A stretch of 64,000 nucleotides of DNA from Macrostomum hystrix (Eukaryota; Animalia; Platyhelminthes), in the NCBI GenBank assembly GCA_950097015.1, contig CATNEN010000001.1, positions 5,456,001 through 5,520,000 of the forward strand, in the 5' to 3' direction. This document shows, piece by piece, positions 9,598-63,475 of this stretch. Position numbers and translations under genes: made by a program. The notes beneath the pieces were generated by a model. That model was not told the origin of the DNA and searched no databases. It was given only the letters and a program-made list of their open reading frames with translations. The number at the start of each line of letters is the position of its first letter. Position 1 is the stretch's first letter.

Positions 9598-9967
9598 GGG
9601 GTCGGTGGCAGAGCGGTTAACGCATTTGTCTCTCACACCACGGTCCCCAAGTTCGATTCCACAGCGAGGCCACATTCATTTGGGGCGCAGCCGCGGAGAG
9701 AAGGCTTGGGGGTTTGTCGTGCAATTTACGCCCTTGAGGGCCAACCTCCAAGGCACAGTGAAGTTTACACTGCCTGACGATGAGAAAGTCAGGGCAGATG
9801 TACACACCTGTGTGAGCGTGTGTCTGCACACGGTATCTGTGTGCGTGTGTGCTCAGGAGTCAGCGAAATGGGCAAAATTGCATCGTCGCGAGCTGCGGGT
9901 CTTATGTCACCAAATGCTCGCAACCCTCCTGCAGTTATTATTGTTATCATCATAATTATTATCATAA
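9598..9967 (+). mobile_element. tRNA-derived SINE (family A), near full-length, with 10-bp TSD GCATGACAAG
   Basis: Pol III A box TGGCAGAGCGG, B box GTTCGATTCC and a (TTA/TCA)n tail. GCATGACAAG occurs at 9586-9595 and 9968-9977. The body is shared with about 7 other copies in the window. Confidence 0.9.
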
Positions 9968-42300: not shown

Positions 42301-45300
42301 CAACCGGAACGACAAACAGTTTTGACTCGCTTGGCGCGGAACGATCGTCGGGCGGGACGGCAGCCTCTCGGCGAACGGTTTCAAGCGCGTCCCAGTTTTT
42401 CGATGCAGACGTCGATAGCTATCCGTTTTACAACTCCGAAGCTAGTAGGCAGCAGAGGCGCCTGCAACAGCGGCTGTCTCTGCGACTGCAGCGTAGAGGC
42501 AACAGCGATGGAGGTTAGGAGCGCTGCTGCTGCTGCTGCCATGCACTGCCCTGCATTGTGGCGTTTTATACTGCTGAATGTGCCACATGGCTCGAATTGC
42601 TTTTTTGCTGTTTAAGCATATTTACTATCGTTAATAGAAGTTCTACAAATATCGTAATACGTAGTTTCAAGTACAATTAGGTACTCGTACTTCCGTTTTT
42701 AATGTTAATGATGAAAATCAAAACGCACTTAATAAGTTTGTGATCCAGGGCTGCAATAAATGTCTTGGCTATTCGCATACGCATTATATAGAAACATTTT
42801 AATGACAGTGCCTTGGCTTAGTATTGCATTTTGCACGCTATCTAGAGCACGATGACTGAAGCATTTGTGAGAAACTTACATTTTTTTGAGATTTTTTTCT
42901 CTGAACTTAAAAAAATCCTTATTTAAACACACAAATCAGTTTACTTGTCGAGTGAATGTTTAACTAATCGAAACCGAATTTAAAATGTAATTTTACTTGA
43001 TTATTTAATGAAAAAATTCTCAAGAAATTCGTACTACACAAGAAATCTAACAGTGATTTTTATCCCACCCTTTCTTCCCTCCCTATTCCACTCTCGATTC
43101 TTCACCCCTCCAAAAAATATTCATCTGCAAAAAATCCGATTCGCAAACGCTGAAAAACCGCAGCCGGTCTAAAGCGTCCAACCCCACCAGCGAGCCTGCC
43201 GCTGACGCCGGCAAAGACCGCGACCCTGCCGGCTGTCTTTGCCACCGACGCCGATGCCGACGTAACCGACGCCTCAGATGCTCAGCGACGACGCTCGCTA
43301 AACTCGTTGATGATCCGCGCGATGGAGCACGAAGACAGTTTGCGATCAGAGATGCGCTGCCTCAGCATCGACGAAGCACTGAATGCTCCGGATGCCACGC
43401 CGCAAGTGGAAGAGAAGTCTATCAGCGAGGAAATGTCACGGCCTATATCGCCGATGGAGACAGTCGATTCAGAGATGGCCACCCCGGTGCAGGAGGCAGC
43501 ACCGAGTTTTTCTGCTGCGCCAATCGCTGCCACTGTTGCCGAATTTTCCAGCCAGGAGGCACTGGAGGAGGCTTTCGACAAAGTCGCAGAGCTACCGTCC
43601 GCTCAGTCGTCATCTTCGTATGCTTCTGCCACAGAAGAAGAAGATGAAGAGGAAGCCGTAGGCAGAAGCTGGACCGAGCCAGAGCTTCAATCGTCAAGCA
43701 TGTTTCATTCTGGCGGCATTCGACCAGAGGAGCTCGTCTCACCTACCAAGGAGGAAGTTTCAGAACCTGGGCGGCGTTTCTCGGCCCTCGTCTCATCAGA
43801 ATATACTTTCAGACGGATGGAAGAGAAGCTGGACAGTCCCGTGCAGAGTCCTGTCGATGCGTACAAGAAGTTTCCATCGCAACAGCATCACCCGGCACCG
43901 CCTCATTTAACTGCTTCCGAGGAGGACCGCGGTTCAGCATTCGACGCCAGACTTCAGCGTGCAGAGCAGATGATTAATGAGGCCGAATGCGTAATTGTTA
44001 ACCGGTACACAGGTATCGGCGAGGATATCGAGCAGGTCGGCCTCGAGATAGATCGAGTCATACCAGACAGCATGCTAGTTTCGACAACAACAGCAGCATC
44101 GCGATCGCCCGATCGTCTTGAGACGGACTGGTGCCGTCAACTCAGCGAGCCAGATGCTGTCCTAGCCGAAGCTGAAGTTAAGAATGTCGATATTATGGAC
44201 AGCGAGACCCTCGTTTTGGCAGTTCAGCTGCGCGTTTCTCATGAGCCGTCCAAAGCGCAGCCGCAGACTGAAGCTCGTGATGAAGTGATCGAAGAAAAAC
44301 CCCAGGCTGATGCTCGTGATGAGGAGCTCGAGGAGCAGCCACTGCATGACGCTCGTGATGAAGAGGTCGAGGAGAAACCGCTGGCTGCAGCTCTTTATGA
44401 AGAGCTCCAGGAGGAGCCGCTGGCGGCAGCTCGTAATGAAGAGATCGAAGAGAAACCCCAGGCTGAAGCTCGTGTTGAAGTTCCTGAGGAGAAGCAGCTA
44501 GCTGAAGCTCGTAATGAGGAGGTGCCGCTGGCTGATGCGCGTAATGAAGAGCTTGAAGAGGGGCCGGTGGCTGAAGCTCGTCCTGAAGAGAGCGAGGAGA
44601 AGCCGCTGGCTGAAGCTCGTGATGAAGAGGTCGAGGAGAAGCCGCTGCACGAAGCTCATGATGAAGAGCTCGAAGAGAAACCACAGGCTGACGTTCGTGA
44701 TGAGGAGCTCGAGGAGAAACCACAGGCTGACGCTCGTGATGAGGAGCTCGAGGAGAAACCACAGGCTGACGTTCGTGATGAGGAGCTCGAGGAGAAACCA
44801 CAGGCTGACGCTCGTGATGAAGAGCTCGAGGAGAAGCCCCTGGCTGAAGCTCGTACTGAAGAGCTCGAGGAGGAGCCGCTAGCAGGTGCCCGTGATGAAG
44901 AGCTCGAGGAGGAGCCGCTGAACGAAGCTCAAAATGAAAATCTCGAAAAGAAACCACAGGCTGATGCTCGTGATGAAGAGCTCGAGGAAAAACCACAGGC
45001 TGATGCTCGTGATAAAGAGCTCGAGAATAAGCCCCTGTCTGAAGCTCGTACTGAAGAGCTCGAGGAGGAGCCGCTGGCTGAAGCTCGTGCTGAAGAGATT
45101 GAGAAGGAGCCCTTGGCTGCAGCTCATGATGAGGAGGAGCCTCTGACTGCAGCTCGTGATAAGGAGCTCGAGGAGGAGCCGCTGAACGAAGCTCATGATG
45201 AAAAGCTCGAAGAGAAACCACAGACTGATGCTCGTGATGAGGAGTTCGAGGAGAAACCACAGGCTGATGCTCTTGAGGAGGAGCTCGAGGGGAAACCAAA

Positions 45301-48300
45301 GGCTGACGCTCGTGATGAGGAGCTCGAGGAGAAACCACAGGCTGACGCTTGTGATGAGGAGCTCGAGGAGAAACCACAGGCTGACGCTTGTGATGAAGAG
45401 CTCGAGGAGGAGCCCCTGTCTGAAGCTCGTACTGAAGAGCTCGAGGAGGAGCCGCTGGCTGAAGCTCGTGCTGAAGAGGTTGAGAAGGAGCCCTTGGCTG
45501 CAGCTCATGATGAGGAGGAGCCTCTGACTGCAGCTCGTGATAAAGAGCTCGAGGAGGAGCCGCTGAACGAAGCTCATGATGAAAAGCTCGAAGAGAAACC
45601 ACAGGCTGACGTTCGTGATGAGGACCTCGAGGAGAAACCACAGGCTGAAGCTCGTATTGAAGAGCTCGAGGAGGAGCCGCTGGCTGTAACTCTTCATGAC
45701 GAGCTCGAGGAGGAGCCGCTGCACGAAGCTCATGATGAAAATCTCAAAGAGAAACCACTGGCTGATGCTTGTGATGAGGAGCTCGACAAGAAACCACAGG
45801 CTGATGCTCGTGATAAAGAGCTCAAGGAGAAGCCGCTGGCAGGTGCCCGTGATGAAGAGCTCGACGAGGAGCCGCTTGCTGAAGCTCTTGCTGAAGAGGT
45901 TGAAAAGGAGCCCTTGGCTGCAGCTCATGATGAGGAGGAGCCGCTGGCCGCAGCTCGTGATGAAGAGCTCGAGGAGGAGCCGCTGAACGAAGCTCATGAT
46001 GAAAAGCTCGAAGAGAAACCACAGGCTGACGTTCGTGATGAGGAGCTCGAGGAGAAACCACAGGCTGACGCTCCTGATGAAGAGCTCGAGGAGAAAACAC
46101 AGGCTGACGCTCTTGATGAGGAGCTGGAGGAGAAACCACAGGCTGACGCTTGTGATGAAGAGCTCGAGGAGGAGCCCCTGGCTGAAGCTCGTACTGAAGA
46201 GCTCGAGGAGGAGCCGCTGGCTGTGGCTCTTCCTGAAGAGCTCGAGGAGGAGCCGCTGGCTGCAGCTCGTGCTGAAGAGGTTGAGAAAGAGCCCTTGGCT
46301 GCAGCTTGTGTTGTAGAGGAGCCGCTGGCTGCAGCTTGTGTTGTAGAGGAGCCGCTGGCTGCAGCTTGTGTTGTAGAGGAGCCGCTGGCTGCAGCTTGTG
46401 ATGAAGAGCTCAAAGATGAGCCTCGGGCTGAAGCTTTCCAGGAAGAGCTCGAGGAGGAGCCGCTGTCTGCAGCTTGTGATGCAGAAGTCGACGAAGGGCC
46501 CCAGACTGGCGTTTGTTCTAAAAGTCTCGTGGAGGCGCAGCAGGCTGAAGATTGTCAAGAAGAGCCAGAGGAGGAGCTGCAGGCTGAAGATCGTCAAGAA
46601 GAGTCAGAGGAGGAGCTGCCATCCGAAGATCGTCAAGAAGAGCCAGAGGAGGAGCTGCAGGCCGAAGATCGTCAAGAAGAGCCAGAGGAGGAGCCTCAGA
46701 CAGAAGTTTGCCATGAAGCGCTCGAGAAGGAGCCACTAACTGAAACTCGTCATAAAGATCTCGAGCCCCGGGCTGAGGCTCTTGATGAAGAGCTCAAGGA
46801 AGGGCCACGAGCAGTGCCTCGCTTCGAGGAGATCGAGGAGGAGCCGCAGGCTAAAGTTCGTCATGAAGAGTTCCATGAGGAGCCGGAGTCACAAGCTGGT
46901 CATGAAGTGCTGAAAGAAGTGCCACAAACGGTGCCTCACTCCGAAGAGATCGATCTGGAGCCGTATTCCAAAGCTTGTCAAGAAGAGCCAGATGAGAAGC
47001 TGCAGACGGAAGATCATCCTGAAGAGTTCGAGGAGGAACCCCAGGCCGATGCTTGTCAGGAAGAGGTCGAAGAGGAGCCGCTGACTGAAGCACGAGGTGA
47101 AGAGCTCGAGGAAGAGCCACAGACAGAACTTCGACTTGAAGAACTGGAGGGGGGTCCACAGACTGAGGTTAGCACTGAAGAGCTCGTAGAGGGGCCACGG
47201 TCAGAAGCTCGTTATGAAGATCTCGAAGAAGAGTCACAGATCGAAGCTCAACATGAAGAGCTGGAAGAAGAGTACGTTTGTACTAAACTTCTTGAGGAGG
47301 GGCTACAGGCTGAGGATCGTCAAGAAGAGCCTGGGGAGGAGCTGAATGCTGAAGCGCGTCATGAAGAGATTGACTTGCAGCCGCATTTTGAAGGTCCTCA
47401 GGAAGAAGTTGAGGAAGCCCCATTTTTAGGAGCTCGTCGTGAACAGCTTGAGGAGGAGTCGCACAATCAAGAGCTAGAGACTAGTATACGCACTGAAGAG
47501 CTGGAGGAACAGCTTGAGGAGCATAATGAGTCGTCAGTGGCACATGAGTCTGAACCAGAGAAATCAATCGTAATAACGGAGACCTTTGTCTTGGCTGTGC
47601 AATTGCGACAGAATACAGACCTGGATCAGAGCGATTCGGAAGATGAGTATGATGTTGTGCAGTACAGAAGCTCTGGATCCCAATTCGCACCATCCGACGT
47701 TCATGAGGAACTAGAGCATCAGGAATCAAACGAGGAGGAACTCAAAGAGAAGCCAGATTCTGAGATTGACGAAAATATTATGGATTTGGAAGAGGTAATA
47801 AATGAACAGGAAAGACTAGAAGCTGAGGTAATAAGAAAACTGGTGCGTGACGTCATCGAAGCAGCCTTGCTCGCTGATGAAGCTAGATGGAATGAAGGTG
47901 AAGCAATATTTGAAGACAATATGCAAAAAAACGACTATTTTACTGCTGGTCAAGATGACTCAGAGCTACAGGAGTACTCTAACAATACAGCAAACGGAGA
48001 GTCGAAGCAGGAGCCGCAAGATGTAGAATATAATCAGACAGAAGCTCAGGAAGATGCAGCTTTTAGTGATTTAGTTGAACAAAAGAAAGAGTCTCACTCC
48101 ATTTTACACGATGACTTACAAGCAGAAGAGGCACCTTGTGTTACTCAATCACTCGAGGAGCTTCAAAATGCCGCAAGTGCGAAAGCTGATTGCAGAGAGG
48201 CAAGTACTGAAGATGCACACGAGGTAGTCGTCGATTGCGAATCGCGAGTGCTTGCAGTTGCGCTCCGAAAACCCTCGAAAGAAATAATAGCAAGTGAAGA

Positions 48301-51300
48301 AGAGGACTGTTCATACCCAACAACTGAGAGGCGAGAGCAGTATGCTGTTGGTCCCTCGTCGAAGAGCATCGCGTCAGAAGATGTTGTGTCATTGAAACGA
48401 AACATATCGCATGCCAGTGATGATGATGCGCCTCTTTTAACAGACGCTGTTGCAGCTGCTTTGACGGAATCACACACACTTCCCGTACAGCTCAGAAGTA
48501 CAGAATCCCAATTCGATGTATTGGAAGAAGACTTTCCTGCCGGTGAGATCAAGTCGGAATTCGAAAAGGTCGAAAAAGAGAATGCTCAAGAAGAAGAGCT
48601 GTCAAGTGAGACAACTCATGAGGAATTCGAGAAAGAGCCAGAGACTGAATCTCAAGAAGAAGAGTCTGAAAAAGAGACTGCTCAAGAAAAAGAGATTGAA
48701 CATGAGCCGATTCAAGAGCTTGAAAAAGAGGCTGCTAAGGAAGAAGATTCTCAAAAACATACTGCTCGGGAAGAAGAGCTTGAAAAAGAGACAGCTCATG
48801 ATGAAGAATTCGAACAAGAGCCAGAGACTGAATCTCAAGAAGAGTTTGAAAGAGTGACTGCTCAGGAAGAAAAGTTTGAAAGAGAGACTGCACATGAGAA
48901 AGTGCTTGAAAAAGAGACTGCTCAGGAAGAAGAGTTTGAAACAGAGACTGCACATGAGGAAGTGCTTGAAAGAGAGACTGCTCAGGAAGAAGAGCTCAAG
49001 CAGGAGACAGATCAAGAAGAAGAGCTCGAACAGGAGCCAGGTCGGGAGAAAGAGAGTGAAAGAGATACTGCTCAAGAGGAACTCAAACAGGAGACGGCTC
49101 AAGTGGAAGAGCTCGAAATAGAGTCAGATCAAGAAGAGCTTGAACAAGAGCCAGCTCAGGCGCTCGAGCTCGAAAGAGAGTCGCTAGTTGTAACAAAAAA
49201 ACAGGCACTCGAGGAAGATCTAGACACTTCTAGTTGGCCAAATAACACAACTCAGAATGAAAAAGTCCCACAAATAGTAGTTCACCACGAGGAAGACGAA
49301 GACTCCCAAATATTTTGGAATGAAGACATCGAGTCGTGTCCCAAGGAAGGAGACGCAGATAATGTCCTTGAAAATGAGAATCAGGCTAAGCAATTCGACC
49401 AGCTAGTTGATTCATGCGCAAAAGATTGTGTACAAAAAGCTTTGAGCGCTGCCATGAGCAGCTTGCTCAAAGAAACAGGAGGTTGGTCGTCGGCAACAGA
49501 ACAGGTGAAGCAAGTGTCGCCTTTCAGCAAGGAGCATGAAAATTACGAGTCGCTTTCAGTAGAGAAGCAACTACAGAGAGAGCCACTTCCGGTTGAAAAG
49601 CCTGATCAGCAAGACTCGCTTCCCGTCGAGGAGCACGAAGATCAGCAGTCGCTTCCGGTCGAGGAGCACGAAGATCGTGAGTCGCTTGCGGTCGAGGAGC
49701 ACGAAGATCATGAGTCGCTTTCGGTCAAGGAGCCCGACCAGCGAGAGTCGCTTGCGGTCGAGGAACACGAGAATCGTGAGTCGCTTTCGGTCGAGGAGCA
49801 CGAGGATCGTGAGTCGCTTCCAGTTGAGGAGCACGAAGATCATGAGTCGCTTCCGGTCGAGAAGCACGAGGATCATGGGTCGCTTTCGGTCGAGGAGCAC
49901 GAGGATCGTGAGTCGCTTCCGGTCGAGGAGCACCAGGATCATGAGTCGCTTCCGGTCGAGGAACACGAGGATCATGAGTCGCTTTCGGTCGAGGAACACG
50001 AAGAGCGAGAGTATCTTACAGTCGAGGAGCAGGAGGCTCGGGAGTCGCTTCCAGTCGAGGAGCAGGAGGATCGTGAGTCGCTTCCGGTCGAGGAACACGA
50101 AGAGCGAGAGTCACTTACAGCCAAGGAGCACCAGGATCATGAGTCGCTTTCGGTCGAGGAGCACGAGGATCATGAGTCGCCTTCGGTCGAGGAGCACGAG
50201 AATCGTGAGTCGCTTCCAGTCGGGGAGCAGGAGGATCGGGAGTCGCATCCGGTCGAGGAGCACCAGGATCATGGGTCGCTCTCGTTCGAGGAGCACGAGG
50301 ATCATGAGTCGCTTCCTGTCGAGGAGCCCGACCAGCAAGAGTCGCTTCCGGTCGAGGAGCACGATGATCATAAGTCGCTTACAGTCGAGGAGCCCGACCA
50401 GCGAGAGTCGCTTTCGGTCGAGGAGCACGAGGATCGTGAGTCGCTTCCGGTCGAGGAGCAGGAGGATCGTGAGTCCCTTCCGGTTGAGGAGCACGATGAT
50501 CATGAGTCGCTTCCAGTCGAGGAGCCCGACCAGCGAGAGTCGCTTCCGGTTGAGGAGCCCGAGGATCATGATTTGCTTCCGGTCGAGGAGCACGAGGATC
50601 GTGAGTCGCTTCCGTTCGAGGAACACGAAGAGCGAGAGTCACTTTCGGTCGAGGAGCCCGACCAGCGAGAGTCGCTTTCGGTCGAGGAGCACGAGGATCA
50701 TGAGTTGCTTTCGGTAGAGGAGCACGAGGATCATGAGTCGCTTTCGGTTGAGGAGCCCGACCAGCGAGAGTCACTTTCGGTCGAGGAGCACGAGGATCGT
50801 GAGTCGCTTCCAGTCGAGGAGCAGGAGGATCGTGAGTCGCTTCCGGTCAAGGAGCCCGACCAGCGAGAGTCGCTTCCCGTCGAAGAGCAGGAGGATCGTG
50901 AGTCGCTTCCAGTCAGGGAGCAGGAGGATCGGGAGTCGCATCCGGTCGAGGAGCACCAGGATCATGGGTCGCTCTCGTTCGAGGAGCACGAGGATCATGA
51001 GTCGCTTCCGGTCGAGGAGCACGATGATCGTGAGTCGCTTCCAGTCGAGGAGCAGGAGGATCGTGAGTCGCTTCCGGTCGAGGAGCAGGAGGATCATGAG
51101 TCGCTTCCTGTCGAGGAGCCCGACCAGCAAGAGTCGCTTTCGGTCGAGGAGCACGAGGATCGTGAGTCGCTTCCGGTCGAGGAGCAGGAGGATCGTGAGT
51201 CCCTTCCGGTTGAGGAGCACGATGATCATGAGTCGCTTCCAGTCGAGGAGCCCGACCAGCGAGAGTCGCTTCCGGTTGAGGAGCACGAGGATCATGAGTT

Positions 51301-54300
51301 GCTTCCGGTCGAGGAGCACGAGGATCGTGAGTCGCTTCCGTTCGAGGAACACGAAGAGCGAGAGTCACTTTCGGTCGAGGAGCCCGACCAGCGAGAGTCG
51401 CTTTCGGTCGAGGAGCACGAGGATCATGAGTTGCTTTCGGTAGAGGAGCACGAGGATCATGAGTCGCTTTCGGTTGAGGAGCCCGACCAGCGAGAGTCAC
51501 TTTCGGTCGAGGAGCACGAGGATCGTGAGTCGCTTCCAGTCGAGGAGCAGGAGGATCGTGAGTCGCTTCCGGTCGAGGAGCCCGACCAGCGAGAGTCGCT
51601 TCCCGTCGAGGAGCAGGAGGATCGTGAGTCGCTTCCGGTCAAGGAGCCCGACCAGCGAGAGTCGCTTTCTGTCGAGGAGCAGGAGGATCGTGAGTCGCTT
51701 CCGGTCAAGGAGCCCGACCAGCGAGAGTCGCTTCCCGTCGAAGAGCAGGAGGATCGTGAGTCGCTTCCAGTCAGGGAGCAGGAGGATCGGGAGTCGCATC
51801 CGGTCGAGGAGCACCAGGATCATGGGTCGCTCTCGTTCGAGGAGCACGAGGATCATGAGTCGCTTCCGGTCGAGGAGCACGATGATCGTGAGTCGCTTCC
51901 AGTCGAGGAGCAGGAGGATCGTGAGTCGCTTCCGGTCGAGGAGCAGGAGGATCATGAGTCGCTTCCTGTCGAGGAGCCCGACCAGCAAGAGTCGCTTCCG
52001 GTCGAGGAGCACGATGATCATAAGTCGCTTACAGTCGAGGAGCCCGACCAGCGAGAGTCGCTTCCGGTTGAGGTGCACGAGGATCATGAGTTGCTTCCGG
52101 TCGAGGAGCACGAGGATCGTGAGTCGCTTCCGTTCGAGGAACACGAAGAGCGAGAGTCACTTTCGGTCGAGGAGCCCGACCAGCGAGAGTCGCTTTCGGT
52201 CGAGGAGCACGAGGATCATGAGTTGCTTTCGGTAGAGGAGCACGAGGATCATGAGTCGCTTTCGGTTGAGGAGCCCGACCAGCGAGAGTCACATTCGGTC
52301 GAGGAGCACGAGGATCGTGAGTCGCTTCCAGTCGAGGAGCAGGAGGATCGTGAGTCGCTTCCGGTCGAGGAGCCCGACCAGCGAGAGTCGCTTTCTGTCG
52401 AGGAGCAGGAGGATCGTGAGTCGCTTCCGGTCAAGGAGCCCGACCAGCGAGAGTCACTTTCGGTCGAGGAGGACGAGGATCGTGAGTCGCTTCCAGTCGA
52501 GGAGCAGGAGGATCGTGAGTCGCTTCCGGTCGAGGAGCCCGACCAGCGAGAGTCGCTTCCCGTCGAGGAGCAGGAGGATCGTGAGTCGCTTCCGGTCGAG
52601 GAGCCCGACCAGCGAGAGTCGCTTTCGGTCGAGGAGCACGAGGATCGTGAGTCGCTTCCAGTCGAGGAGCAGGAGGATCGTGAGTCGCTTCCGGTCGAGG
52701 AGCCCGACCAGCGAGAGTCGCTTTCGGTCGAGGAGCACGAGGATCGTGAGTCGCTTCCAGTCGAGGAGCAGGAGGATCGTGAGTCGCTTCCGGTCGAGGA
52801 GCCCGACCAGCGAGAGTCGCTTCCGGTCGAGGAGCACGAGTATCGTGAGTCTCTTCCGGTCAAGGAGCCCGACCAGCGAGAGTCGCTTTCTGTCGAGGAG
52901 CAGGAGGATCGTGATTCGCTTCCGGTCGAGGAGCCCGACCAGCGAGAGTCGCTTCCGGTCGAGGAGCACGAGGATCGTGAGTCGCTTCCGGTCAAGGAGC
53001 CCGACCAGCGAGAGTCGCTTCCCGTCGAGGAGCACGAGGATCATGAGTTGCTTCCAGTCGAGGAGCAGGAGGATCGTGAGTCGCTTCCGGTCGAGGAGCC
53101 CGACCAGCGAGAGTCGCTTCCCGTCGAGGAGCACGAGGATTATGAGTTGCTTCCAGTCGAGGAGCAGGAGGATCGTGAGTCGCTTCCGGTCGAGGAGCCC
53201 GACCAACGAGAGTCGCTTCCCGTCGAGGAGCACGAGGATCATGAGTCGCTTCCGTTCGAGGAACACGAAGAGCGAGAGTCACTTTCGGTCGAGGAGCCCG
53301 ACCAGCGAGAGTCGCTTTCGGTCGAGGAGCACGAGGATCATGAGTTGCTTTCGGTAGAGGAGCACGAGGATCATGAGTCGCTTTCGGTTGAGGAGCACCA
53401 GGATCATGAGTTGCTTTCGGTCGAGGAGCGCATGGATCATGAGTCGATTCCCGTAGAGAAGCACGAGGATCATGAGTCGATTTCATTAAAGGAGCACGAA
53501 GATCAAGAGTCGCTTCTGGAGGAGGATTTCGATCAGCGGGATTCACTTCGGGTCGAAGAACACGAAGAGCGAGAGTCGCTTCCAATGGAGGAACACGAAG
53601 TGCCAGCTGCCGCTGAAACGCTTGTTCTTGCAGTTCCGCTTAGAGACCGATGCGGGGACGAGTCAAGTGCTTCCATTTCGAGCCCAATGCGCCAATGCGG
53701 ATCACAGTTCGTACCTGCTCTGATTGAGTCAGACGACGACGCTAAGTTTGAATATAAAGAAATCGAAGAGATTTCTGAAGGCAGTGTGGAAACGAAGAAG
53801 CACGATTTATTAAAAGAAGCGGAGGCACAGTCTGTTGAGCATGTAGAGAAACTTGCGGTCGAAATGAAGGAGACAGAAGATTTTCCCGTTGAGTACAGGG
53901 AGACCGAGGAGGATTTCCCAGTAGAGTACACGAGCTGGCCTACCGGAGACTTCCCAACAGATTTTAGAGAAACAGAAGGCGAAAATTTCCCAACTGAGTA
54001 CAGAGAAGCTGAAGAGCAGCCGGAGGAATACAAAGAGAGCGACCAACTTCCGGTCGGATATCATGAGTCTGAGAGGCAGTCTATTGAGTACAAAGATGTC
54101 TATGAAATTTCTGGCAGGTATGAAGATGCTGAGTCGACTGAGAATCAGTTGCTCTTGGAGTCTGCAGTGCCTAAATATGCAGTCGACCTTCAAGTTGAAG
54201 ATCCCATGAAAACACCTGCTGAGCATGAGAAAAAAGATGAGTTCTCAATTGAGCAATTTAAACTGGTGGAAGAAGAAAAACTTATGAAGGAAGTGGACAA

Positions 54301-56241
54301 GACACCGGTGGAACTGCTCTCTGAAGTGCCAGCTGATTTCAGTGAAGTTGATAAACCTCCTACTGGCTATAGAGAGGAGGCCGATAATTCATCGACTGAC
54401 AAGGAGCATCTGCCTGAGTGCAGTGAGACTGAGATGTTCTTAGATCAGAAAGAAAACAATGAACAGCCTCTGGCGTCCTCAAAAGAGCTCGAGCAACTTT
54501 CACCAGAAATACTTGACGAAGTAGAAGCTAAAGTAGTCGATGAAGAGGAGGATCTGTATGAGTCCGACCAGAGTCAGCCAGGAAGCGATGCTCGCTACGA
54601 AGATGACTTCGATGACGATCAGGGCGAAGACTCAGTGACTTCTCCAGCTCTCGGAGTTGTATCAACACTTGCTCAGGATTCGGAAACGGGCTTCGAATTA
54701 GTAGATCAGCCGCGGATCGAAAGTGAAAGCATTTTTCGTCCCTTCACTGAGCCAGTTGTCACAGAGGCTGAGGGTCGTATTCTACACGGCCCGGACGCCT
54801 TTCCACTGGTTGGCGTGCCTCATGAGACTTCTTCTGCTGCTGCTGGCTCTACGGCTACTTCTGGCCCGAGCAAACTGCAGGACGATGGTTCGGAGCTTCC
54901 TGGCGAGTCCGCTCAGAGTCCTGAGTCGTTCGATTCCGTCATCAAGCGTTCTCTGCCGGCTTTGGCCAATCTCAGCCTTGTGGCGGCCGCAGCAACAGCA
55001 GCAGCCGAGTCCGAGTCGCCTAGGCCGAGTCCTGGCTCTCCTCGACTGGCTAGGGACGGTTCTGCAATAAGCGGCGATTTTGCTTCGCCGGACGAGTGCC
55101 TATTTCAGATGGAAGATAACTTAGCGGAATTACAGATCGAACCAACATCCGATGCCGAGAACATGGACACCTCGATAGTTACACTGGATGACTCGGAGAC
55201 CAGTCAACAGCCGGCAGCGAGCTATGGCGCAAGGCTACCGCGAGATGTATCGTCGTTAAGTCAGGATGCTTCTAAATCCAGCGAAGTCCTTAGCTCCGGC
55301 ATAAGCTCCGACAATCGATTTGGTCCTTCGGCAACAGCTGATGACATTCACAGCATCATGGGACAGGATGACAGCGGCTTCATCCTGCTTACTCGAGACG
55401 ACGCAGCATCGGATATTGGCAGCGAGAGCGGTGGCGAAGCAGACGAGGAGCCATCTGTCGGTCTTCAACGATTCGATGACGCAACCGATGTTTCGACCTC
55501 TTTGGCCAGCGATGTCGCTTCAACTCTTGCTGCGCCAGACGACGAGACTGTGCAGAATTCAGAATGCGGCGAAGAAGAAATCATCGACACAGAAGCTGAC
55601 GACAAGGAAGAGGCGGAACGACTATCTATAAAGTCATCCTCTACGACTTCTAGGGATGCTTCAAGTCCGAGACACTTCGCCAGATCATTCGAAGAGTTTA
55701 GGGGCTCTGAAAATCAACTGAGCAGCGCTGCCTCCGAAATTGATGCCGCGGCACATCAGCTGGCTACTAAAGCTCTCAGCTCTGCCGCAGATGTTGTCGA
55801 GTGCGAAGAGTTCGAACGTACAGCAGAGGAGCGCCTTGAGCATTCGCTCCAGGAAGAAGAGCTAGCTTTAGACTTCGAAAAGGCGGCTGAGGAGATCATA
55901 CTGAAAGAACTAGAAAATGAAGATAAGAAATGTCAAGAAGAACCTGAATTTACGGATGAGACTGCTGATGTCGGTCAGATGTCAGTAGGCGACATCGACT
56001 CGGAGCTGTTCCAAGGAGCCATTTATCAGGAAGGCGACGACGACGCAGAAGAAATTGAGATGGAAGAAGATGACGATGACGATGACGATGCTGAAGGAGC
56101 AGCACTACCAAGTGCTTCTCCAACCTCCAAGTATATTTTCATGACTAACAAAGCAGTCGAACAGGTAATCATTGATGATAACCTTCTTTCGCCGATTATG
56201 GAGCTAAAGGAAACACCAGAGAGTTCACCTGAACAACGGCT

Positions 56242-56272
<31 letters not shown>

Positions 56273-58731
56273 CCACAGCCACAGCAGCAGCAGTATCTTC
56301 AGCCGTTGAGGCAACAGCACTTGCAGGCAGCAAGGTCACCGCCTAAGGTTGGCTTTGAAATCGAAACACTGACCGAAGCAGAAGAGCCTGCTGCATCAGT
56401 GGAGCTTCCTTCCTCGTTTGGTTCGAGAAAATCTGACCGATTCCCAGAGATGCTACAAGAGGAAAAACAATGCGACCTCGGCGAAACTTCCAAGGAACAT
56501 AAAGAACAGAGTTCTCAGGGAAGTTCTGGCGATTTCGATTTTGAGATGATCGCGGCGCTGCCTGATGATGTCACATCGGGCTCGCTAACTGAATTCGAAC
56601 GACTGGAACGGGAGCTGGAAGCTGCTGAAAAGTCGCCGCCTTCAGTTGAAGCCGTCATGGAGGACGTCGAGGAGGTTGACGAAACACTTCAAGAGCAAGA
56701 TGAAGAGACTCTTAAAGAGCAGCACGAGCATCAGATTTTTTCTGATGCTTCAAAGATCGTCGAAGCCCTCGCATCGCCCGAAGTGTCATTCAGAGAGGTA
56801 GACAGAGACGTCGACAGTCTCGGCGAAGAAGACGACGAAGAAGAGCCACCGGCTGCAGCGGCACTGAGACGCTTTCCGCCAGGTCGGGCTAAAAAAATGA
56901 CTCCAGTGATGGAGACCTCGATGGCATCGTCTGTGTGCGCCCCAAGCGAAGTGGACTCGCTCACTGAAGAGGCCCAGCTGGCCATGACGAGGAGCGTCGA
57001 TAGCATCGATGAGGACGCGTCGGCAACGGCGGCATCGGCTGGCAGCGACGGAGGCAGCGGCTGGACACTGGGCTACGCCATGACGACAGACAAGGTGCGA
57101 GTTGTGCCAGAGCCAGCTGCCGTGATGGCCGCTTCAGCAGACAGTCTCGACTGGGAGGCTCAAGGAGGAGCGGATGCTGATGCGGCAGCCGACGAGGAAA
57201 CTTTAGGTACAGATCGACTCTAGCCTATCGGCTAGTACATTCCCGACTCGAACTTCTCTTCCCCCTGCTCTCCATCTTTTCTCTATCTTCATTTCTCGCC
57301 CAAAAATCACAAGCCAGTCTTTTGTGATTGGAGTTACCAATCGAAGCAATGACCATGGTAATGAAAGTCGTTGTGGATAAGTCTTTTTCTTAAGTTAGCC
57401 TTTCTAATTGTAGTGAAGCCAATAATACTGATTCTAATATTTTTTTACATTCACAAAACTTTCATCCTGCTTAGTTAAAAACTAGAAATTATTTTGCTGT
57501 TGTCGATTTAGTCAGAAAATTCTATGTAATGAGCACCTTATAACTTGTAGTTCACTGACTAAACGCAGTATTTTATTTTCGCTTGCCTGCACTTTCCGTG
57601 CGTTTGTTTATCGCAAGACTGTTTTCACAATCTTCAGCTAGCATTAACAGGAGGCGCATAATTTAAAATCGATTTTTTTTCATAATAACAAAAATTTAAT
57701 TTACTAATCATGGCAATAGCAGTAGTCGGCATTAAAATCAATTATGATTTCTCGCAACTCGCGAATGGCTTCTAGAACGACGATGATTGGTTTAGAAAAC
57801 TGGATACACGGATGCATTAGTCTCCACTAGCCAATAACTTTCGAGTATAATATAAGGACTAAATGTGCGTTAAAATGAAATCTAATTTTATGGGGCCAAA
57901 GCTGTAACAAATAAGGAAGACTTCAGCTAAGTTGAAGAATATCACAGACCAGATAATGACATCAGAACCTGAGCCACGTACGGACACTTCCGTTGAGGAG
58001 TCTAAGCAGATGCAACAGTGTTCGACCACAGCTGTTGAAGTCGAGGAGCTGCAGGGTGCTGTTGGAACCAGCGAAAACTTTGAAGCCACAGCCGCAGCTA
58101 GCGGCAGCTGTCAACCTTCGCATAAAACTGCGGCGGTTGCCACCGCGACTGCAGTGGGCAGAAAATTAGGGCACGGTGAGAACAAAGGCTTGGTTACTAA
58201 AATAGCGTTCGATTTGGCTTTGAATAAAACTTGAAACACAAAGGCCACATGTCTACCAGCAAAAGTGTCTTGTCGACAAACTTTCAGACATGTCAGTGAT
58301 GAGTATGGACGAAGACTATGTTGTTGAGATGGATCCTAGGGAGCACGACCACTTTCTGTCTGAGGGTATCCCAGAAGAGTATCGTAAGTTTCACTAACAC
58401 AGCTTATTACATTGGCAAAACAGGCAAAACTGTAGGTAGCCATCAATGTTTGTTCGATTGTCCTAGAATTCGGTTTCAAGTATTCCAAGTTTCAGTCCGA
58501 CCAAGATTCTGTTTGTAGTTTAAAGTCGGTCGTCTATTTTTCGAATTTAACAATTAAGCTACTAAACCACTGTTTTTTGTGTTGCGATGCAACCTAACTT
58601 TCGTCTTGTTAAGTTTCCAATCACATATATCATTGCCAACATGTCTAAAACTTTTCTACTAAAGCAAACCTTAAAAAATGCATTGCATCATCCAATTTGC
58701 AGACGGGACAACTCCAGCATCAACAAGATGA
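17893..58731 (+). CDS. Ank2: Canonical/giant ankyrin (ANK repeats-ZU5A-ZU5B-UPA-death domain-giant exon). Core exons 26044-26145, 30531-31007, 31086-31961, 32164-32745, 33527-33746, 34708-34800, 34921-34994, 35604-35776, 38282-39326, 39448-40432, 40501-40668, 41138-41203, 41731-41796, [43164-57206], 57948-58175, 58288-58383, 58703-58731
   Basis: Diagnostic ankyrin sequences: [106 protein letters not shown], plus a death domain (DWPLAARELGLS..ATGNALEAALRRIGRDDVV). Exon phases chain consistently. The symbol indicates the family (Ank2/unc-44 type), not proven orthology; 5' and 3' small exons are less certain. Confidence 0.93.
18350..18785. repeat. 20-21-bp minisatellite (GGGAAGGTTGGTTCTG[T/G]CA[C/T]T)n
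   Basis: About 20 copies. Confidence 0.93.
19213..19545. repeat. 21-bp minisatellite (CTGGTTAAAACACCCTCGCCT)n
   Basis: About 16 near-identical copies. Confidence 0.95.
19900..20123 (-). mobile_element. Second tRNA-derived SINE family (B); related fragments near 3520-3545, 5465-5490 and 38095-38172
   Basis: The minus strand reads ...GACCTGGAGGTCGGGAGTTCGAGTCTC (B box). CAGCCGTTCAGTCCGTGGACTGG also recurs, approximately, at ~3519-3543. Confidence 0.5.
20195..20560 (+). mobile_element. SINE family A, full-length copy
   Basis: A and B boxes, complete body and 3' GCTGCGGG...CCCGCAGCC stem. Confidence 0.9.
21055..21174 (+). CDS. Candidate ankyrin alternative first exon 1b (MAMSFYELDSSLSLLLEADAAQLSASRLVASQTIGDLKSE)
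   Basis: ATG-initiated 40 codons ending at GAG|GTAAGC, phase 0. Confidence 0.5.
21320..22620. repeat. 11-bp purine-rich minisatellite (GATCGGGGAGA)n interleaved with two duplicated SINE-tail blocks
   Basis: Direct reading; SINE 3' end plus flank at ~21356-21485 and ~21711-21840. Confidence 0.93.
24039..24356. repeat. (GATA/TAGA)n microsatellite
   Basis: Direct reading. Confidence 0.96.
24798..24869 (+). CDS. Candidate ankyrin alternative first exon 1c (MEAKPEESSPPSRIFGTDLTTSSS)
   Basis: AGAATGG start context; phase-0 donor GTGGGT at 24870. Confidence 0.5.
25287..25319 (+). CDS. Candidate ankyrin alternative first exon 1d (MDSLGSAFSLD)
   Basis: ATG plus 11 codons, phase-0 donor GTAAGA at 25320. 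Confidence 0.5.
25650..25930 (+). mobile_element. SINE family A copy with internal deletions
   Basis: Head, body hairpins and (AAT/TAT)n tail match the other copies. Confidence 0.85.
26044..33746 (+). CDS. Ankyrin membrane-binding domain exons (21 recognisable ANK repeats)
   Basis: Repeated G-x-T-[PA]-L-H-x-A-A motifs across exons 26044-26145, 30531-31007, 31086-31961, 32164-32745 and 33527-33746. Confidence 0.95.
26340..26845. repeat. Degenerate ~20-bp minisatellite (AAATCCTCAGCGGTTTCCTC)n
   Basis: About 24 copies, intronic. Confidence 0.9.
27400..27752 (-). mobile_element. SINE family A, antisense, full-length
   Basis: Reverse complement of the consensus, including the tail. Confidence 0.9.
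29358..30141 (+). mobile_element. Internally deleted Tc1/IS630-superfamily DNA transposon with 87-bp TIRs and TA target duplication
   Basis: TIRs at 29358-29444 and 30055-30141 are near-perfect reverse complements, flanked by TA (29356-57, 30142-43). Confidence 0.9.
29596..30054 (+). pseudogene. Truncated Tc1/IS630-like transposase (N-terminal HTH domains only)
   Basis: ...SRSNIAR*LNVKRKTVTSIRRRYELTG..RGGDRVPKL..LDENPLLTLKEMRRLL..LSEATVSRAL..ITLK. In-frame TGA at 29749-29751; no DDE domain. Confidence 0.82.
30144..30480 (-). mobile_element. SINE family A, antisense, abutting the transposon
   Basis: Reverse complement of the consensus. Confidence 0.88.
35007..35087 (+). repeat. Intronic ~80-bp duplicate of ankyrin exon sequence 33552-33632
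   Basis: CCAAGCAGAAAAATCA[C/T]GTCGAGATTTTC...GAGGCTAGTTGGGATA occurs twice with about 3 substitutions. Confidence 0.9.
37008..37096 (+). CDS. Candidate internal first exon of an ANK-less ankyrin isoform (MTISSSNDCLANCQNSTDPNQQDAPDLDR)
   Basis: ATG-initiated, 29 codons + 2 nt, donor GTGAGT at 37097. Phase 2 matches the ZU5 exon acceptor at 38282. Confidence 0.5.
38282..39326 (+). CDS. Ankyrin ZU5-A/ZU5-B and start of UPA (spectrin-binding domain)
   Basis: [72 protein letters not shown]. Confidence 0.96.
39448..40432 (+). CDS. Ankyrin UPA remainder and death domain (single exon)
   Basis: DKTLE..EVLDG, GNL, PFRENRL, then the death-domain helices. Confidence 0.92.
41983..42518 (+). CDS. Candidate alternative 3' terminal exon of a short ankyrin isoform (Ser/Thr/Gln-rich, ends GNSDGG*)
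   Basis: Phase-1 acceptor TAG at 41980-41982, open frame to TAG at 42516-42518, AATAAA at 42755-42760. Confidence 0.55.
43164..57206 (+). CDS. Ankyrin giant exon (14,043 nt, 4681 codons, acidic and repetitive); read-through stop at 57221-57223 if not spliced
   Basis: Uninterrupted 4638-aa ORF in the track. The CAG acceptor at 43161-43163 is in frame (phase 1); candidate donor GTACAG at 57207 (phase 1). Confidence 0.9.
44257..47500 (+). repeat. Coding repeat array A in the giant exon: ~14-aa (42-nt) unit EELEEKPQADARD(E)
   Basis: Translation of the giant ORF. Confidence 0.9.
48560..49170 (+). repeat. Coding repeat array B: ~10-aa unit EKETAQEEEL
   Basis: Translation of the giant ORF. Confidence 0.85.
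49540..53600 (+). repeat. Coding repeat array C: 11-aa (33-nt) unit ESLPVEEHEDR, about 120 copies
   Basis: GAGTCGCTTCCGGTCGAGGAGCACGAGGATCGT tandem units. Confidence 0.95.
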
Positions 58732-62114: not shown

Positions 62115-63475
62115 GGAAGAGAGAGAAGAGTGAATGGGGAGAGAAAACAGTGAATGGGGAGAGAGAAGAGTGAATGGGAGAGAGAAGAGTGAATATGAGA
62201 GAAAAGTGAATGGGAGAGAAAACAGTGAATGGGGAGAGAGAAGAGTGAATGGGAGAGAGAAGAGTGAATATGAGAGAAAAGTGAATGGGGAGAGAAAACA
62301 GTGAATGGGGAGAGAGAAGAGTGAATGGGGAGAGAGAAGAGTGAATGGGAGAGAGAAGAGTGAATGGGAGAGAGAAGAGTGAATGGGGAGAGAGAAGAGT
62401 GAATGGGGGGGAGAGAGAAGAGTGAATGGGGAGAGAGAAGGGTGAATGGGGGGAGAGAGAAGAGTGAACGGGGGGAGAGAGAGAAGAGTGAACGGGGAGA
62501 GAGAAGAGTGAATGGGGAGACAAGAGTGAATGGAGGGAGAGAGAAGAGTGAATGGGAGAGAGAAGAGTGAATGGGAGAGAGAAGAGTGAATGGGGAGAGA
62601 GAAGAGTGAATTGGGGGGAGAGAAGAGTGAATGGGAGAGAGAAGAGTGAATGGGGAGAGAGAAGAGTGAATGGGAGAGAGAAGAGTGAATGGGAGAGAGA
62701 AGAGTGAATGGGAGAGAGAAGAGTGAATTGGGGGGAGAGAGAAGAGTGAATGGGGAGAGAAAACAGTGAATGGGGAGAGAGAAGAGTGAATGGGAGAGAG
62801 AAGAGTGAATATGAGAGAAAAGTGAATGGGAGAGAAAACAGTGAATGGGGAGAGAGAAGAGTGAATGGGAGAGAGAAGAGTGAATATGAGAGAAAAGTGA
62901 ATGGGGAGAGAAAACAGTGAATGGGGAGAGAGAAGAGTGAATGGGGAGAGAGAAGAGTGAATGGGAGAGAGAAGAGTGAATGGGAGAGAGAAGAGTGAAT
63001 GGGGAGAGAGAAGAGTGAATGGGGGGGAGAGAGAAGAGTGAATGGGGAGAGAGAAGGGTGAATGGGGGGAGAGAGAAGAGTGAACGGGGGGAGAGAGAGA
63101 AGAGTGAACGGGGAGAGAGAAGAGTGAATGGGGAGACAAGAGTGAATGGAGGGAGAGAGAAGAGTGAATGGGAGAGAGAAGAGTGAATGGGAGAGAGAAG
63201 AGTGAATGGGGAGAGAGAAGAGTGAATTGGGGGGAGAGAAGAGTGAATGGGAGAGAGAAGAGTGAATGGGGAGAGAGAAGAGTGAATGGGAGAGAGAAGA
63301 GTGAATGGGAGAGAGAAGAGTGAATGGGAGAGAGAAGAGTGAATTGGGGGGAGAGAGAAGAGTGAATGGGGAGAGAGAAGAGTGAATGGGGAGAGAGAAG
63401 AGTGAATGGGGAGAGAGAAGAGTGAATGGGGAGAGAGAAGAGTGAATGGGGAGAGTGAAGAGTGAATGGGAGATA
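62115..63475. repeat. 19-20-bp purine-rich minisatellite (GAGAGAAGAGTGAATGGG[G])n
   Basis: About 65 copies; explains the long minus-strand pseudo-ORFs. Confidence 0.96.

What the first reader, a model, noticed from the sequence alone, without database searches (positions are those of the whole stretch)
43164..57206. 14-kb giant ankyrin exon located after the death domain, as a frame-neutral cassette
Seen: a stop-free 14,043-nt exon flanked by phase-1 acceptor and donor sites (length divisible by 3), followed by three more small phase-1 exons (57948-58175, 58288-58383, 58703-58731). UPA and the death domain share one exon (39448-40432), so nothing is inserted between them. Known: vertebrate giant AnkB/AnkG exons sit between UPA and the death domain, whereas the C. 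elegans UNC-44 long region is C-terminal to it; giant ankyrins organise axons and the axon initial segment. Inference: the gene can make a ~6,500-aa giant isoform, a canonical isoform that skips the exon, and possibly a read-through form ending GTDRL*. This would be a lineage-specific giant ankyrin, probably neuronal, in an apparently lophotrochozoan/flatworm genome.
Basis: partly seen in the sequence, partly recalled or inferred. Interest (0 to 1): 0.85.

Follow-up and report, generated by a model that had tools for sequence, protein, structure and literature searches.

The report
Flatworm giant ankyrin exon, RNA-supported
The 14-kb open stretch is a real, transcribed exon of a flatworm ankyrin gene, spliced in frame after the death domain; this is the usual protostome layout for giant ankyrins, so it adds a member to a known kind.

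Summary
Window 43164-57206 is one stop-free frame of 14,043 nt (0 stops; 98-435 in the other five frames), with AG before it and GT after it, both phase 1.

Upstream on the same strand lies an ankyrin gene with ANK repeats and ZU5-ZU5-UPA. UPA and the death domain share exon 39448-40432.

Spliced contigs from three runs of one study join exon 41138-41203 (three runs) and exon 41731-41796 (two runs) to 43164, at GT..AG borders and in frame. They then run about 1.5 kb into the exon. It is therefore not a separate gene. The 3' donor at 57206 and the three tail exons rest only on phase, sequence and homology.

The nearest relatives are Macrostomum lignano proteins, so the organism is a macrostomid flatworm. 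Its genome holds two paralogous ankyrin loci with their own long frames. They share short N- and C-terminal blocks with this exon but carry unrelated repeat arrays and no death domain.

The exon is about 33% acidic, has a net charge near -1160 and is predicted to be disordered.

Jegla et al. 2016 showed that long ankyrin exons downstream of the death domain are the general protostome state. A planarian long-exon isoform was noted in 2022. Verdict: a new member of a known kind. Neuronal expression was not tested.

The parts
26047..26154 (+). first ANK-repeat coding segment of the ankyrin gene (approximate borders)
   Evidence: tblastn of M. lignano ankyrin P0004 aa 14-49, 78% identity
30531..32745 (+). 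ANK-repeat exons (two large open frames, 30546-31979 and 32209-32766)
   Evidence: Pfam Ank/Ank_2, E 5e-99 and 3e-41; tblastn to P0004 aa 47-660
38274..39326 (+). exon with ZU5-ZU5 and the start of UPA; donor GT at 39327
   Evidence: Pfam ZU5 4e-30, UPA_2 1e-8; 64% identity to P0004 aa 897-1252; sequence
39448..40432 (+). exon with the rest of UPA plus the death domain; phase 0 in, phase 1 out
   Evidence: Pfam UPA_2 and Death 3.5e-12 in one open frame; RNA contigs cover 39446-40431 unbroken and splice 40432>40501
40501..40668 (+). exon B, 168 nt, phase 1/1
   Evidence: GT..AG joints 40432>40501 and 40668>41138 in three runs; homologous to P0004 aa 1445-1488
41138..41203 (+). exon C, 66 nt, phase 1/1; its donor joins 41731, 41983 or 43164
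   Evidence: three alternative joints from 41203
41731..41796 (+). exon D, 66 nt, alternative, phase 1/1; joins the giant exon
   Evidence: joint 41796>43164 in two runs
41983..42513 (+). exon E, 531 nt, alternative Ser/Thr-rich cassette, phase 1/1; its donor joins something outside 39400-44260, not 43164
   Evidence: joint 41203>41983; contigs end their match at 42513 with 28 more letters that do not fit the stretch; no Pfam family
43164..57206 (+). giant exon, 14,043 nt, 4,681 codons, phase 1/1
   Evidence: open frame; acceptor used in RNA contigs that continue about 1.5 kb into it; donor inferred from sequence
43286..44113 (+). conserved N-terminal block of the giant exon (short motifs, two isolated helices)
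   Evidence: 39.5% identity to P0004 aa 1586-1930, E 9e-42; paralogs at 49% and 45%; AlphaFold2 mean pLDDT 50
44268..46318 (+). acidic array 1: 39-nt (13-aa) units, about 53 copies
   Evidence: Tandem Repeats Finder
48651..49182 (+). acidic array 2: 30-nt (10-aa) units
   Evidence: Tandem Repeats Finder
49616..53598 (+). acidic array 3: 33-nt (11-aa, SLPVEEHEDRE) units, about 120 copies, with near-identical blocks at a 726-nt shift
   Evidence: third codon positions vary twice as much as first and second
54917..57150 (+). conserved C-terminal block of the giant exon (motifs LPRDxSSLSQD, DDSGFIL, SPIxELKETPESSPE, SLxEFERLERE, ASxDSLD)
   Evidence: phmmer hits P0001 and P0003; alignment A2; AlphaFold2 mean pLDDT 47.5 with isolated helices
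57948..58175 (+). predicted exon F, 228 nt, phase 1/1
   Evidence: AG/GT borders and open frame only; no homolog found
58288..58383 (+). predicted exon G, 96 nt, phase 1/1, conserved
   Evidence: 78% and 68% identity to the paralogs; the C37 paralog's exon has the same length between printed AG and GT borders; 48% to P0003 aa 866-890
58703..58731 (+). predicted last coding exon, ending in TGA
   Evidence: sequence only

Best explanation
This is the long exon of a giant ankyrin in a macrostomid flatworm.

The gene encodes a standard ankyrin core. ANK repeats bind membrane proteins, ZU5-ZU5-UPA binds spectrin, and a death domain follows. After the death domain comes a run of phase-1 cassette exons whose lengths are all multiples of three, so any combination of them keeps the reading frame.

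Shown here: mRNA joins exon C (41138-41203) or exon D (41731-41796) directly to 43164. That adds about 4,680 residues and gives a protein of roughly 6,300-6,400 residues.

The added polypeptide is about 33% Asp+Glu and has a net charge near -1160. It is predicted to be disordered apart from a few isolated helices. It consists of short conserved N- and C-terminal blocks that flank three private acidic tandem arrays.

Inferred by analogy with Drosophila Ank2-L/XL, C. elegans UNC-44 and vertebrate 480/440-kDa ankyrins: the long isoform is made in neurons. Its core sits on the spectrin membrane skeleton and the long polyanionic tail projects into the axoplasm. The arrays would act as an extended spacer, and the conserved short motifs would be the sites that bind partners.

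The arrays grow and shrink by unequal recombination. This explains why each of the three paralogs carries different repeats.
For: - Ankyrin core domains: Pfam.
- Open frame of 4,686 codons, against 98-435 stops in the other five frames.
- GT..AG joints 41203>43164 (three runs) and 41796>43164 (two runs). Contigs of 1,536-1,563 nt start in the upstream exon and continue past 44260, with no differing letters.
- All exons after the death domain are phase 1 and multiples of 3.
- An M. lignano ankyrin, PAA50710.1 (P0004), runs from ANK-ZU5-UPA straight into a homolog of the exon's N-block (E 9e-42) and C-block.
- Two paralogous loci in the same genome have the same layout.
- In the 33-nt array, third codon positions vary twice as much as first and second.
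- S+E 33.6% and SETDKP 55.1% match the composition bias reported for ankyrin long exons.
- Charge-hydropathy values and AlphaFold2 indicate disorder with isolated helices.
- Jegla 2016: long exons lie downstream of the death domain across protostomes, with variable and non-conserved repeat arrays.
Against: - No RNA evidence was obtained for the 57206 donor, for the tail exons, or for continuity of the middle 12 kb of the exon. The single read-laying run covered 39400-44260 only.
- The runs are recorded as kind '?'. That they are RNA is inferred from their spliced contigs.
- Tissue of expression is unknown.
- One or two low-depth contigs read through the acceptor (43005-43184). This could be pre-mRNA or an internal start.
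- No function of the acidic arrays was tested.
- Microtubules are themselves acidic, so direct microtubule binding by the arrays is unlikely. Any tethering must come from the non-repeat blocks.
Confidence: 0.85

Rival explanations
1. The open frame is a separate gene with its own promoter, encoding an acidic repeat protein that merely lies downstream of ankyrin.
For: Low-depth contigs read through the acceptor in one or two runs (43005-43184 and 42930-43150). These could mark an internal transcription start.
Against: Contigs in three runs join ankyrin exons C or D to 43164, in frame. There is no ATG-initiated start near the 5' end, and the frame is open from the AG itself. In M. lignano the homologous region is part of an ankyrin protein. 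Both paralogs place their long frames in the same position behind a UPA exon.
Confidence: 0.04
2. The exon is real, but the giant isoform is not specific to neurons. It could, for example, be a muscle, epidermal or germline scaffold, with the acidic arrays serving some other role.
For: No expression data by tissue were available. The exon's 5' end is assembled in all three runs laid, which are of unrecorded kind and tissue. The genome has three long-exon ankyrin paralogs that may have divided up tissues between them.
Against: Every giant ankyrin studied so far (vertebrates, Drosophila, C. elegans, Ciona) is neuronal.
Confidence: 0.1
3. The length of the exon is partly an assembly artefact: the tandem arrays are over-expanded or mis-assembled, and the true exon is shorter or interrupted.
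For: Blocks of about 500 nt that are 99-100% identical at a 726-nt shift inside the 33-nt array could be assembly echoes. In both paralogs the long frame is broken once inside or next to an array.
Against: The frame stays open through all arrays, which random mis-assembly would rarely allow. The unique parts alone (N block, middle part, C block) make up more than 2,600 codons.
Confidence: 0.1

Closest known systems
[quoted passage not shown] 2016, PMC5135030)
   Same: The same ankyrin core. A very long single exon placed after the death domain. Ser/Glu-rich composition (SETDKP 55%). Tandem arrays within the reported range of 36-228 bp per unit and 5 to more than 160 copies. Alternative inclusion as a cassette.
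   Different: No detectable sequence similarity to any giant ankyrin outside Macrostomum. The repeats are very short (10-13 aa) and extremely acidic, unlike the 76-aa Ank2-XL unit. Flatworms were not sampled in that study.
Vertebrate 480-kDa ankyrin-G and 440-kDa ankyrin-B giant exons
   Same: A giant, largely unstructured insert added to a canonical ankyrin by one alternatively spliced exon.
   Different: The vertebrate exon lies between UPA and the death domain. Here UPA and the death domain share one exon and the long exon lies downstream. Vertebrate AnkG exons have no homologous repeat arrays. No sequence similarity was found.
Macrostomum lignano ankyrin PAA50710.1 (P0004) and fragments PAA48154.1 and UniRef A0A1I8JMR8
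   Same: They share the N-block and C-block motifs and the conserved 96-nt tail exon.
   Different: They are orthologs of the two other paralogs (contigs C37 and C8), not of this gene. Their long region is far shorter, they carry different repeats (a 15-aa EEPSQQHLRESPVPT unit) and no Pfam Death domain is detected.
Planarian (Schmidtea mediterranea) ankyrin-3 homolog with a long-exon isoform (Neiro et al. 2022, PMC9522251)
   Same: A flatworm ankyrin with highly alternative splicing and one long exon, which the authors cite as support for Jegla 2016.
   Different: It is mentioned only in passing. No sequence was available here to compare position, length or repeats.

Membership tests
Bilaterian giant ankyrin (long-exon ankyrin) | Canonical ankyrin core: ANK repeats, ZU5-ZU5-UPA, death domain | tested here: met
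   Pfam Ank, ZU5 (two stretches), UPA_2 and Death. The number of ANK repeats may be below 24; this was not resolved.
Bilaterian giant ankyrin (long-exon ankyrin) | One exceptionally long open exon inside the ankyrin gene, downstream of UPA | tested here: met
   14,043 nt with no stop. The next longest open frame in the window is 574 codons.
Bilaterian giant ankyrin (long-exon ankyrin) | The long exon is spliced in frame to the ankyrin core in mRNA | tested here: met
   Joints 41203>43164 and 41796>43164 with GT..AG borders, phase 1. This holds for the 5' side only.
Bilaterian giant ankyrin (long-exon ankyrin) | The long exon is spliced at its 3' end to the C-terminal exons | tested here: inconclusive
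   GT at 57207, matching phase, and a conserved 96-nt exon downstream in all three paralogs. An M. lignano gene prediction joins the two. No RNA was laid there.
Bilaterian giant ankyrin (long-exon ankyrin) | [quoted passage not shown] | tested here: met
   S+E 33.6%, SETDKP 55.1%, against the values quoted from Jegla 2016.
Bilaterian giant ankyrin (long-exon ankyrin) | Neuronal expression and an axonal role | not testable with these tools
   No tissue-resolved data. The runs laid are of unrecorded kind and tissue.
Chordate-type giant ankyrin (AnkG-480 / AnkB-440 / Ciona) | Long exon inserted between UPA and the death domain | tested here: not met
   UPA and Death lie in one exon, 39448-40432, and the long exon starts 2.7 kb downstream.
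Chordate-type giant ankyrin (AnkG-480 / AnkB-440 / Ciona) | Sequence similarity to the vertebrate giant exon | tested here: not met
   phmmer of the last 1,185 residues against 1.84 billion representatives found only Macrostomum proteins. Word-based searches were blank.

The most novel reading that the evidence does not exclude
The invariant motif DDSGFIL(L/V) in the C-terminal block is conserved in all three paralogs and in both M. lignano homologs. It could be an Atg8-family (LC3/GABARAP) interaction motif. Vertebrate giant ankyrin-G and ankyrin-B exons carry very strong motifs of this kind (Li et al. 2018, as I recall it). If so, giant ankyrin exons would share a functional module across phyla despite having no alignable sequence. 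That would be direct support for a single origin of the long exon.
Probability: 0.1. Interest if true: 0.7.

Novelty: new member of a known kind. Interest (0 to 1): 0.35.

Why it matters
It extends giant ankyrins, with splice-level evidence, to macrostomid flatworms. That phylum was not sampled in the study that proposed a single bilaterian origin of these exons, and the exon lies in the position that study predicts for protostomes.

The three paralogs form a natural comparison set. The same short N- and C-terminal motifs are kept in all three, while the repeat arrays between them are replaced entirely. This points to which parts of a giant ankyrin tail are functional sites and which are length or spacer.

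Macrostomum can be handled experimentally (RNAi, transgenesis), so the spacer idea could be tested there.

Tried and rejected
- **The search for homologous proteins.** All three searches were blank: the last 400 residues, region 3990-4680 and region 30-300 of the whole exon. Low-complexity words and the length filter probably hid relatives. The known homolog P0004 sits in a cluster whose representative is only 800 aa. These blanks say nothing about absence.
- **Complex prediction.** An LC3-like protein of this genome (L015:1501-1863:-) was tested against window:55289-55471, which holds DDSGFIL. The score was 0.27 against a mark of 0.34: no verdict, neither for nor against binding.
- **Pfam.** No family for the exon pieces, exon E or exon F. 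The only matches were below cut-off (PCF11 repeat, CENP-B) and come from the acidic composition.
- **SxIP motifs** (EB1-binding, as in ankyrin-G): only one match in 4,680 residues. Rejected as a feature.
- **39-nt array statistics.** The column statistics for this array are out of register because of indels. They are not used.
- **Donor position in the paralogs.** The paralogs do not show an obvious phase-1 GT at the homologous place, so this gives no support for 57206.
- **The repeat finder** on the 33-nt array only restated the 33-nt period.
Full report
**1. The observation**

- The frame that starts at 43166 is open for 4,686 codons, up to a TAG at 57221-57223. The ORF listing shows it as 43307-57223, counted from the first TTG.
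- The other five frames of 43164-57206 contain 98 to 435 stops.
- The next longest open frame in the whole window is 574 codons.
- The bases before 43164 are ...ccgcAG and the bases after 57206 are GTacag.
- Codons are in register with 43166. The exon therefore starts with the last two bases of a codon and ends with the first base of one: phase 1 on both sides. Its length is 14,043 = 3 x 4,681.

**2. The gene it belongs to**

On the same strand, Pfam finds:
- ANK repeats in 30546-31979 and 32209-32766;
- two ZU5 stretches and the start of UPA in 38286-39371;
- the rest of UPA plus a Death domain in one open frame, 39511-40716.

The exon that carries UPA and Death is 39448-40432. Nothing is inserted between UPA and the death domain.

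**3. RNA evidence**

The look-up of sequencing runs listed four runs of one study (X2-X5, organism B) that hold about 0.7 of the sampled words of 39400-44260. It also listed one weak holder, X1, of another organism label. The kind of the four runs is not on record.

I laid X1-X4 on 39400-44260. The X2-X4 contigs lack exactly the GT..AG-bordered intervals, so I take them to be RNA-derived. They show no differing letters. After the stated cut shifts, the joints are:
- 40432>40501 and 40668>41138 (all three runs);
- 41203>41731;
- 41203>41983;
- 41203>43164 (all three runs);
- 41796>43164 (two runs);
- 41608>41731 (one run).

Contigs of 1,536-1,563 nt begin with 27-28 letters of the upstream exon, enter at 43164 and run beyond 44260.

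Reading the frames exon by exon, every exon after the death domain is phase 1 on both sides and a multiple of three:

| Exon | Coordinates | Length (nt) |
|---|---|---|
| B | 40501-40668 | 168 |
| C | 41138-41203 | 66 |
| D | 41731-41796 | 66 |
| E | 41983-42513 | 531 |
| giant | 43164-57206 | 14,043 |

Both C>giant and D>giant keep the frame.

Exon E ends its match at 42513 with 28 more letters that fit nowhere in the stretch laid. It therefore joins something beyond 44260, and not 43164. That is compatible with an isoform that skips the giant exon, but it does not show one.

A few low-depth contigs read through introns, including 43005-43184. I read these as pre-mRNA, but they leave room for a minor internal start.

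**4. What was not shown**

The following rest on sequence and homology only:
- the donor at 57206;
- exons 57948-58175, 58288-58383 and 58703-58731;
- continuity of the inner 12 kb of the exon.

I built and searched no joined spliced model.

**5. Relatives**

phmmer with the last 1,185 residues against 1.84 billion representatives gave three hits. Two are from Macrostomum lignano:
- P0001 (PAA48154.1);
- P0003 (UniRef A0A1I8JMR8).

The third hit, P0002, is a low-complexity repeat protein. I did not look up its source and I disregard it.

A cluster mate of P0001, P0004 (PAA50710.1, 2,938 aa), is an ankyrin with ANK, ZU5 and UPA. It continues into a homolog of the exon's N-terminal block: giant residues 41-316 against P0004 1586-1930, 39.5% identity, E 9e-42. 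It also holds a homolog of the C-terminal block.

P0003 joins the end of the C block to a homolog of exon 58288-58383. The spacing, 96 residues, is the same as in the window model. P0003 is a gene prediction, not RNA.

The organism is therefore a macrostomid flatworm. The genome is 220 Mb in 42 contigs.

**6. Paralogs**

The N block finds two more loci in this genome. I fetched 40-50 kb around each.

- **Contig C8.** A UPA exon, a homolog of exon B, an N-block frame of 620 codons followed by an open frame of 3,600 codons, then the C block and a homolog of the 96-nt exon.
- **Contig C37 (minus strand).** The same layout, with frames of 669 and 1,520 codons and an extra 1,415-codon repeat frame.

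C37 looks like the ortholog of P0004: their UPA-linker and N-block stretches are nearly the same by eye. C8 is of the P0003 type.

Each paralog has its own repeats, unrelated to the others:
- window: 13-aa, 10-aa and 11-aa acidic units;
- C8: EKVHDEPVHREPVHFEEEE-like and PEYKEPEEVEQ units;
- C37: a 19-aa SPVPTEEHPSSAEVMQLRD unit.

In both paralogs the UPA exon goes straight on to the linker, with no death domain. P0004 also has no Pfam Death hit. Only the window gene keeps the death domain.

The 96-nt exon has the same length in C37, between the AG and GT printed, and is 78% identical in protein.

All three long frames end within about 20 codons of the conserved motif AS(A/T)DSLD. This supports an exon end near 57206.

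**7. The polypeptide**

- Composition: Glu 24.9%, Ser 8.7%, Asp 8.1%. Acidic residues 33%, basic 8%. Net charge -1162.
- S+E is 33.6% and S, E, T, D, K and P together are 55.1%. Jegla et al. report the same bias for ankyrin long exons.
- Arrays: 39 nt x about 53 (44268-46318), 30 nt (48651-49182) and 33 nt x about 120 (49616-53598).
- In the 33-nt array the mean column entropy is 0.36, 0.32 and 0.73 for codon positions 1, 2 and 3, as expected for a translated sequence.
- Inside that array, blocks of about 500 nt are 99-100% identical at a shift of 726 nt. This is either recent unequal exchange or an assembly echo.
- By charge-hydropathy values, all segments fall in the disordered field.
- AlphaFold2 on shallow alignments of the N block (mean pLDDT 50) and the C block (47.5) gives only isolated confident helices and no globular domain.
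- Short motifs are invariant across the three paralogs, and for the C block also in M. lignano: VEEKSIS, GGIRPEEL, DSPVQSP, SQD-S-SS...SSGIS, DDSGFIL, SPI-ELKETPESSPE and EFERLERE.
These lie at giant-exon residues 347, 1472, 1692, 1768 and 3484. Three sit at the edges of array 1 and array 3, one sits just before array 2, and one lies in the unique middle part. The motif is absent from the paralog frames.

**8. Mechanism**

Shown:
- a canonical ankyrin whose mRNA includes the start of a 14-kb open exon after the death domain;
- alternative use of phase-1 cassette exons;
- conserved end blocks flanking private arrays.

Inferred from what is established for Ank2-L/XL, UNC-44 and the 480/440-kDa ankyrins:
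- The core anchors to membrane proteins and spectrin.
- The giant tail is a long flexible projection in axons.
- Given its charge, I expect the arrays to act as an extended polyanionic spacer. I expect the conserved motifs and helices to carry the specific contacts.

**9. Comparison with what is known**

Jegla et al. 2016 found long ankyrin exons in all bilaterian groups they examined, including molluscs and annelids. The exon lies downstream of the death domain in protostomes and echinoderms and upstream only in chordates. The sequence evolves fast, and repeat arrays are variable and not conserved. They did not sample flatworms.

Neiro et al. 2022 mention a planarian ankyrin-3 homolog that has isoforms with one long exon.

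The window exon meets the tested features of a giant ankyrin of the protostome type. It fails the chordate-type position test. It is a new member of a known kind, and its 'lineage-specific' aspect is limited to its arrays.

**10. Most novel reading not excluded**

DDSGFIL(L/V) looks like an Atg8-family interaction motif: an aromatic residue, two residues, then an aliphatic residue, preceded by acidic residues and Ser. Vertebrate giant ankyrin exons carry strong motifs of this kind (Li et al. 2018, listed in the references of PMC7615515; what that paper found is from my own knowledge).

One intron-free LC3-like gene exists in this genome. The complex test gave no verdict. I put this reading at about 10%.

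**11. Verdict**

Interest 0.35.

Noticed in passing
G000:C8:~1214371-1230900 (+) and G000:C37:~242500-264412 (-); loci L002-L014: Two paralogous ankyrin loci, each with its own long open frames (620+3,600 codons; 669+1,520 codons, plus an extra 1,415-codon repeat frame in C37). They share N and C blocks with the window exon but carry unrelated repeat arrays.
   Followed up: partly
L009:7111-7863 (+) and L012:2993-4816 (-); P0004: In both paralogs, and in M. lignano PAA50710.1, the UPA exon runs straight into the linker without a death domain. Only the window gene keeps one. This suggests the death domain was lost after gene duplication.
   Followed up: partly
window 32745-33527: Relative to M. 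lignano P0004 (aa 660-770), about two or three ANK repeats find no counterpart in the window. The gene may have fewer than 24 repeats, or small exons were missed.
   Followed up: partly
window 44204, 47579, 48239, 48467, 53615 (start positions): The ten-residue motif E[TS]xVLAVxLR recurs four times, plus a fifth variant. Three copies sit at the edges of arrays 1 and 3, one just before array 2 and one in the unique middle part. Several are followed by GSQF(A/V)P or SQFDV. It is absent from the paralogs. This suggests the exon grew by duplicating a module and then expanding arrays inside each copy.
   Followed up: partly
window 55370-55393: Invariant DDSGFIL(L/V), an LC3-interaction-like or SUMO-interaction-like motif, is conserved in three paralogs and two M. 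lignano proteins.
   Followed up: partly
window 2270-8100 (+): A class-C GPCR gene (ANF_receptor, NCD3G, 7tm_3), like a metabotropic glutamate receptor, with a (GWLV)n-coding microsatellite in an intron.
   Followed up: partly
window 12404-12877 (+): An open frame with a fibrinogen C-terminal domain (E 4e-17).
   Followed up: partly
window 29758-30102 (+): An HTH_32 (homeodomain-like, transposase-type) open frame inside an ankyrin intron. It is probably a remnant of a DNA transposon.
   Followed up: no
window 62119-63470: A purine-rich 20-nt satellite (GAGAGAGAAGAGTGAATGGG), about 68 copies. It explains the extreme GC skew at the end of the window.
   Followed up: no
window 9572-9955, 20278-20490, 25574-26149, 27456-27758, 30253-30492: A dispersed short repeat whose translation contains ...DEKVRADVHTCVSVCLHTVSVCVCAQESA... 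occurs on both strands in several introns and intergenic stretches. It looks like a SINE or MITE.
   Followed up: no
L015:1498-1863 (-) = G000:C30:~1223801-1224166: An LC3-like Atg8 homolog encoded almost wholly in one open frame with no ATG at its start. The first codons are probably on a separate exon.
   Followed up: no
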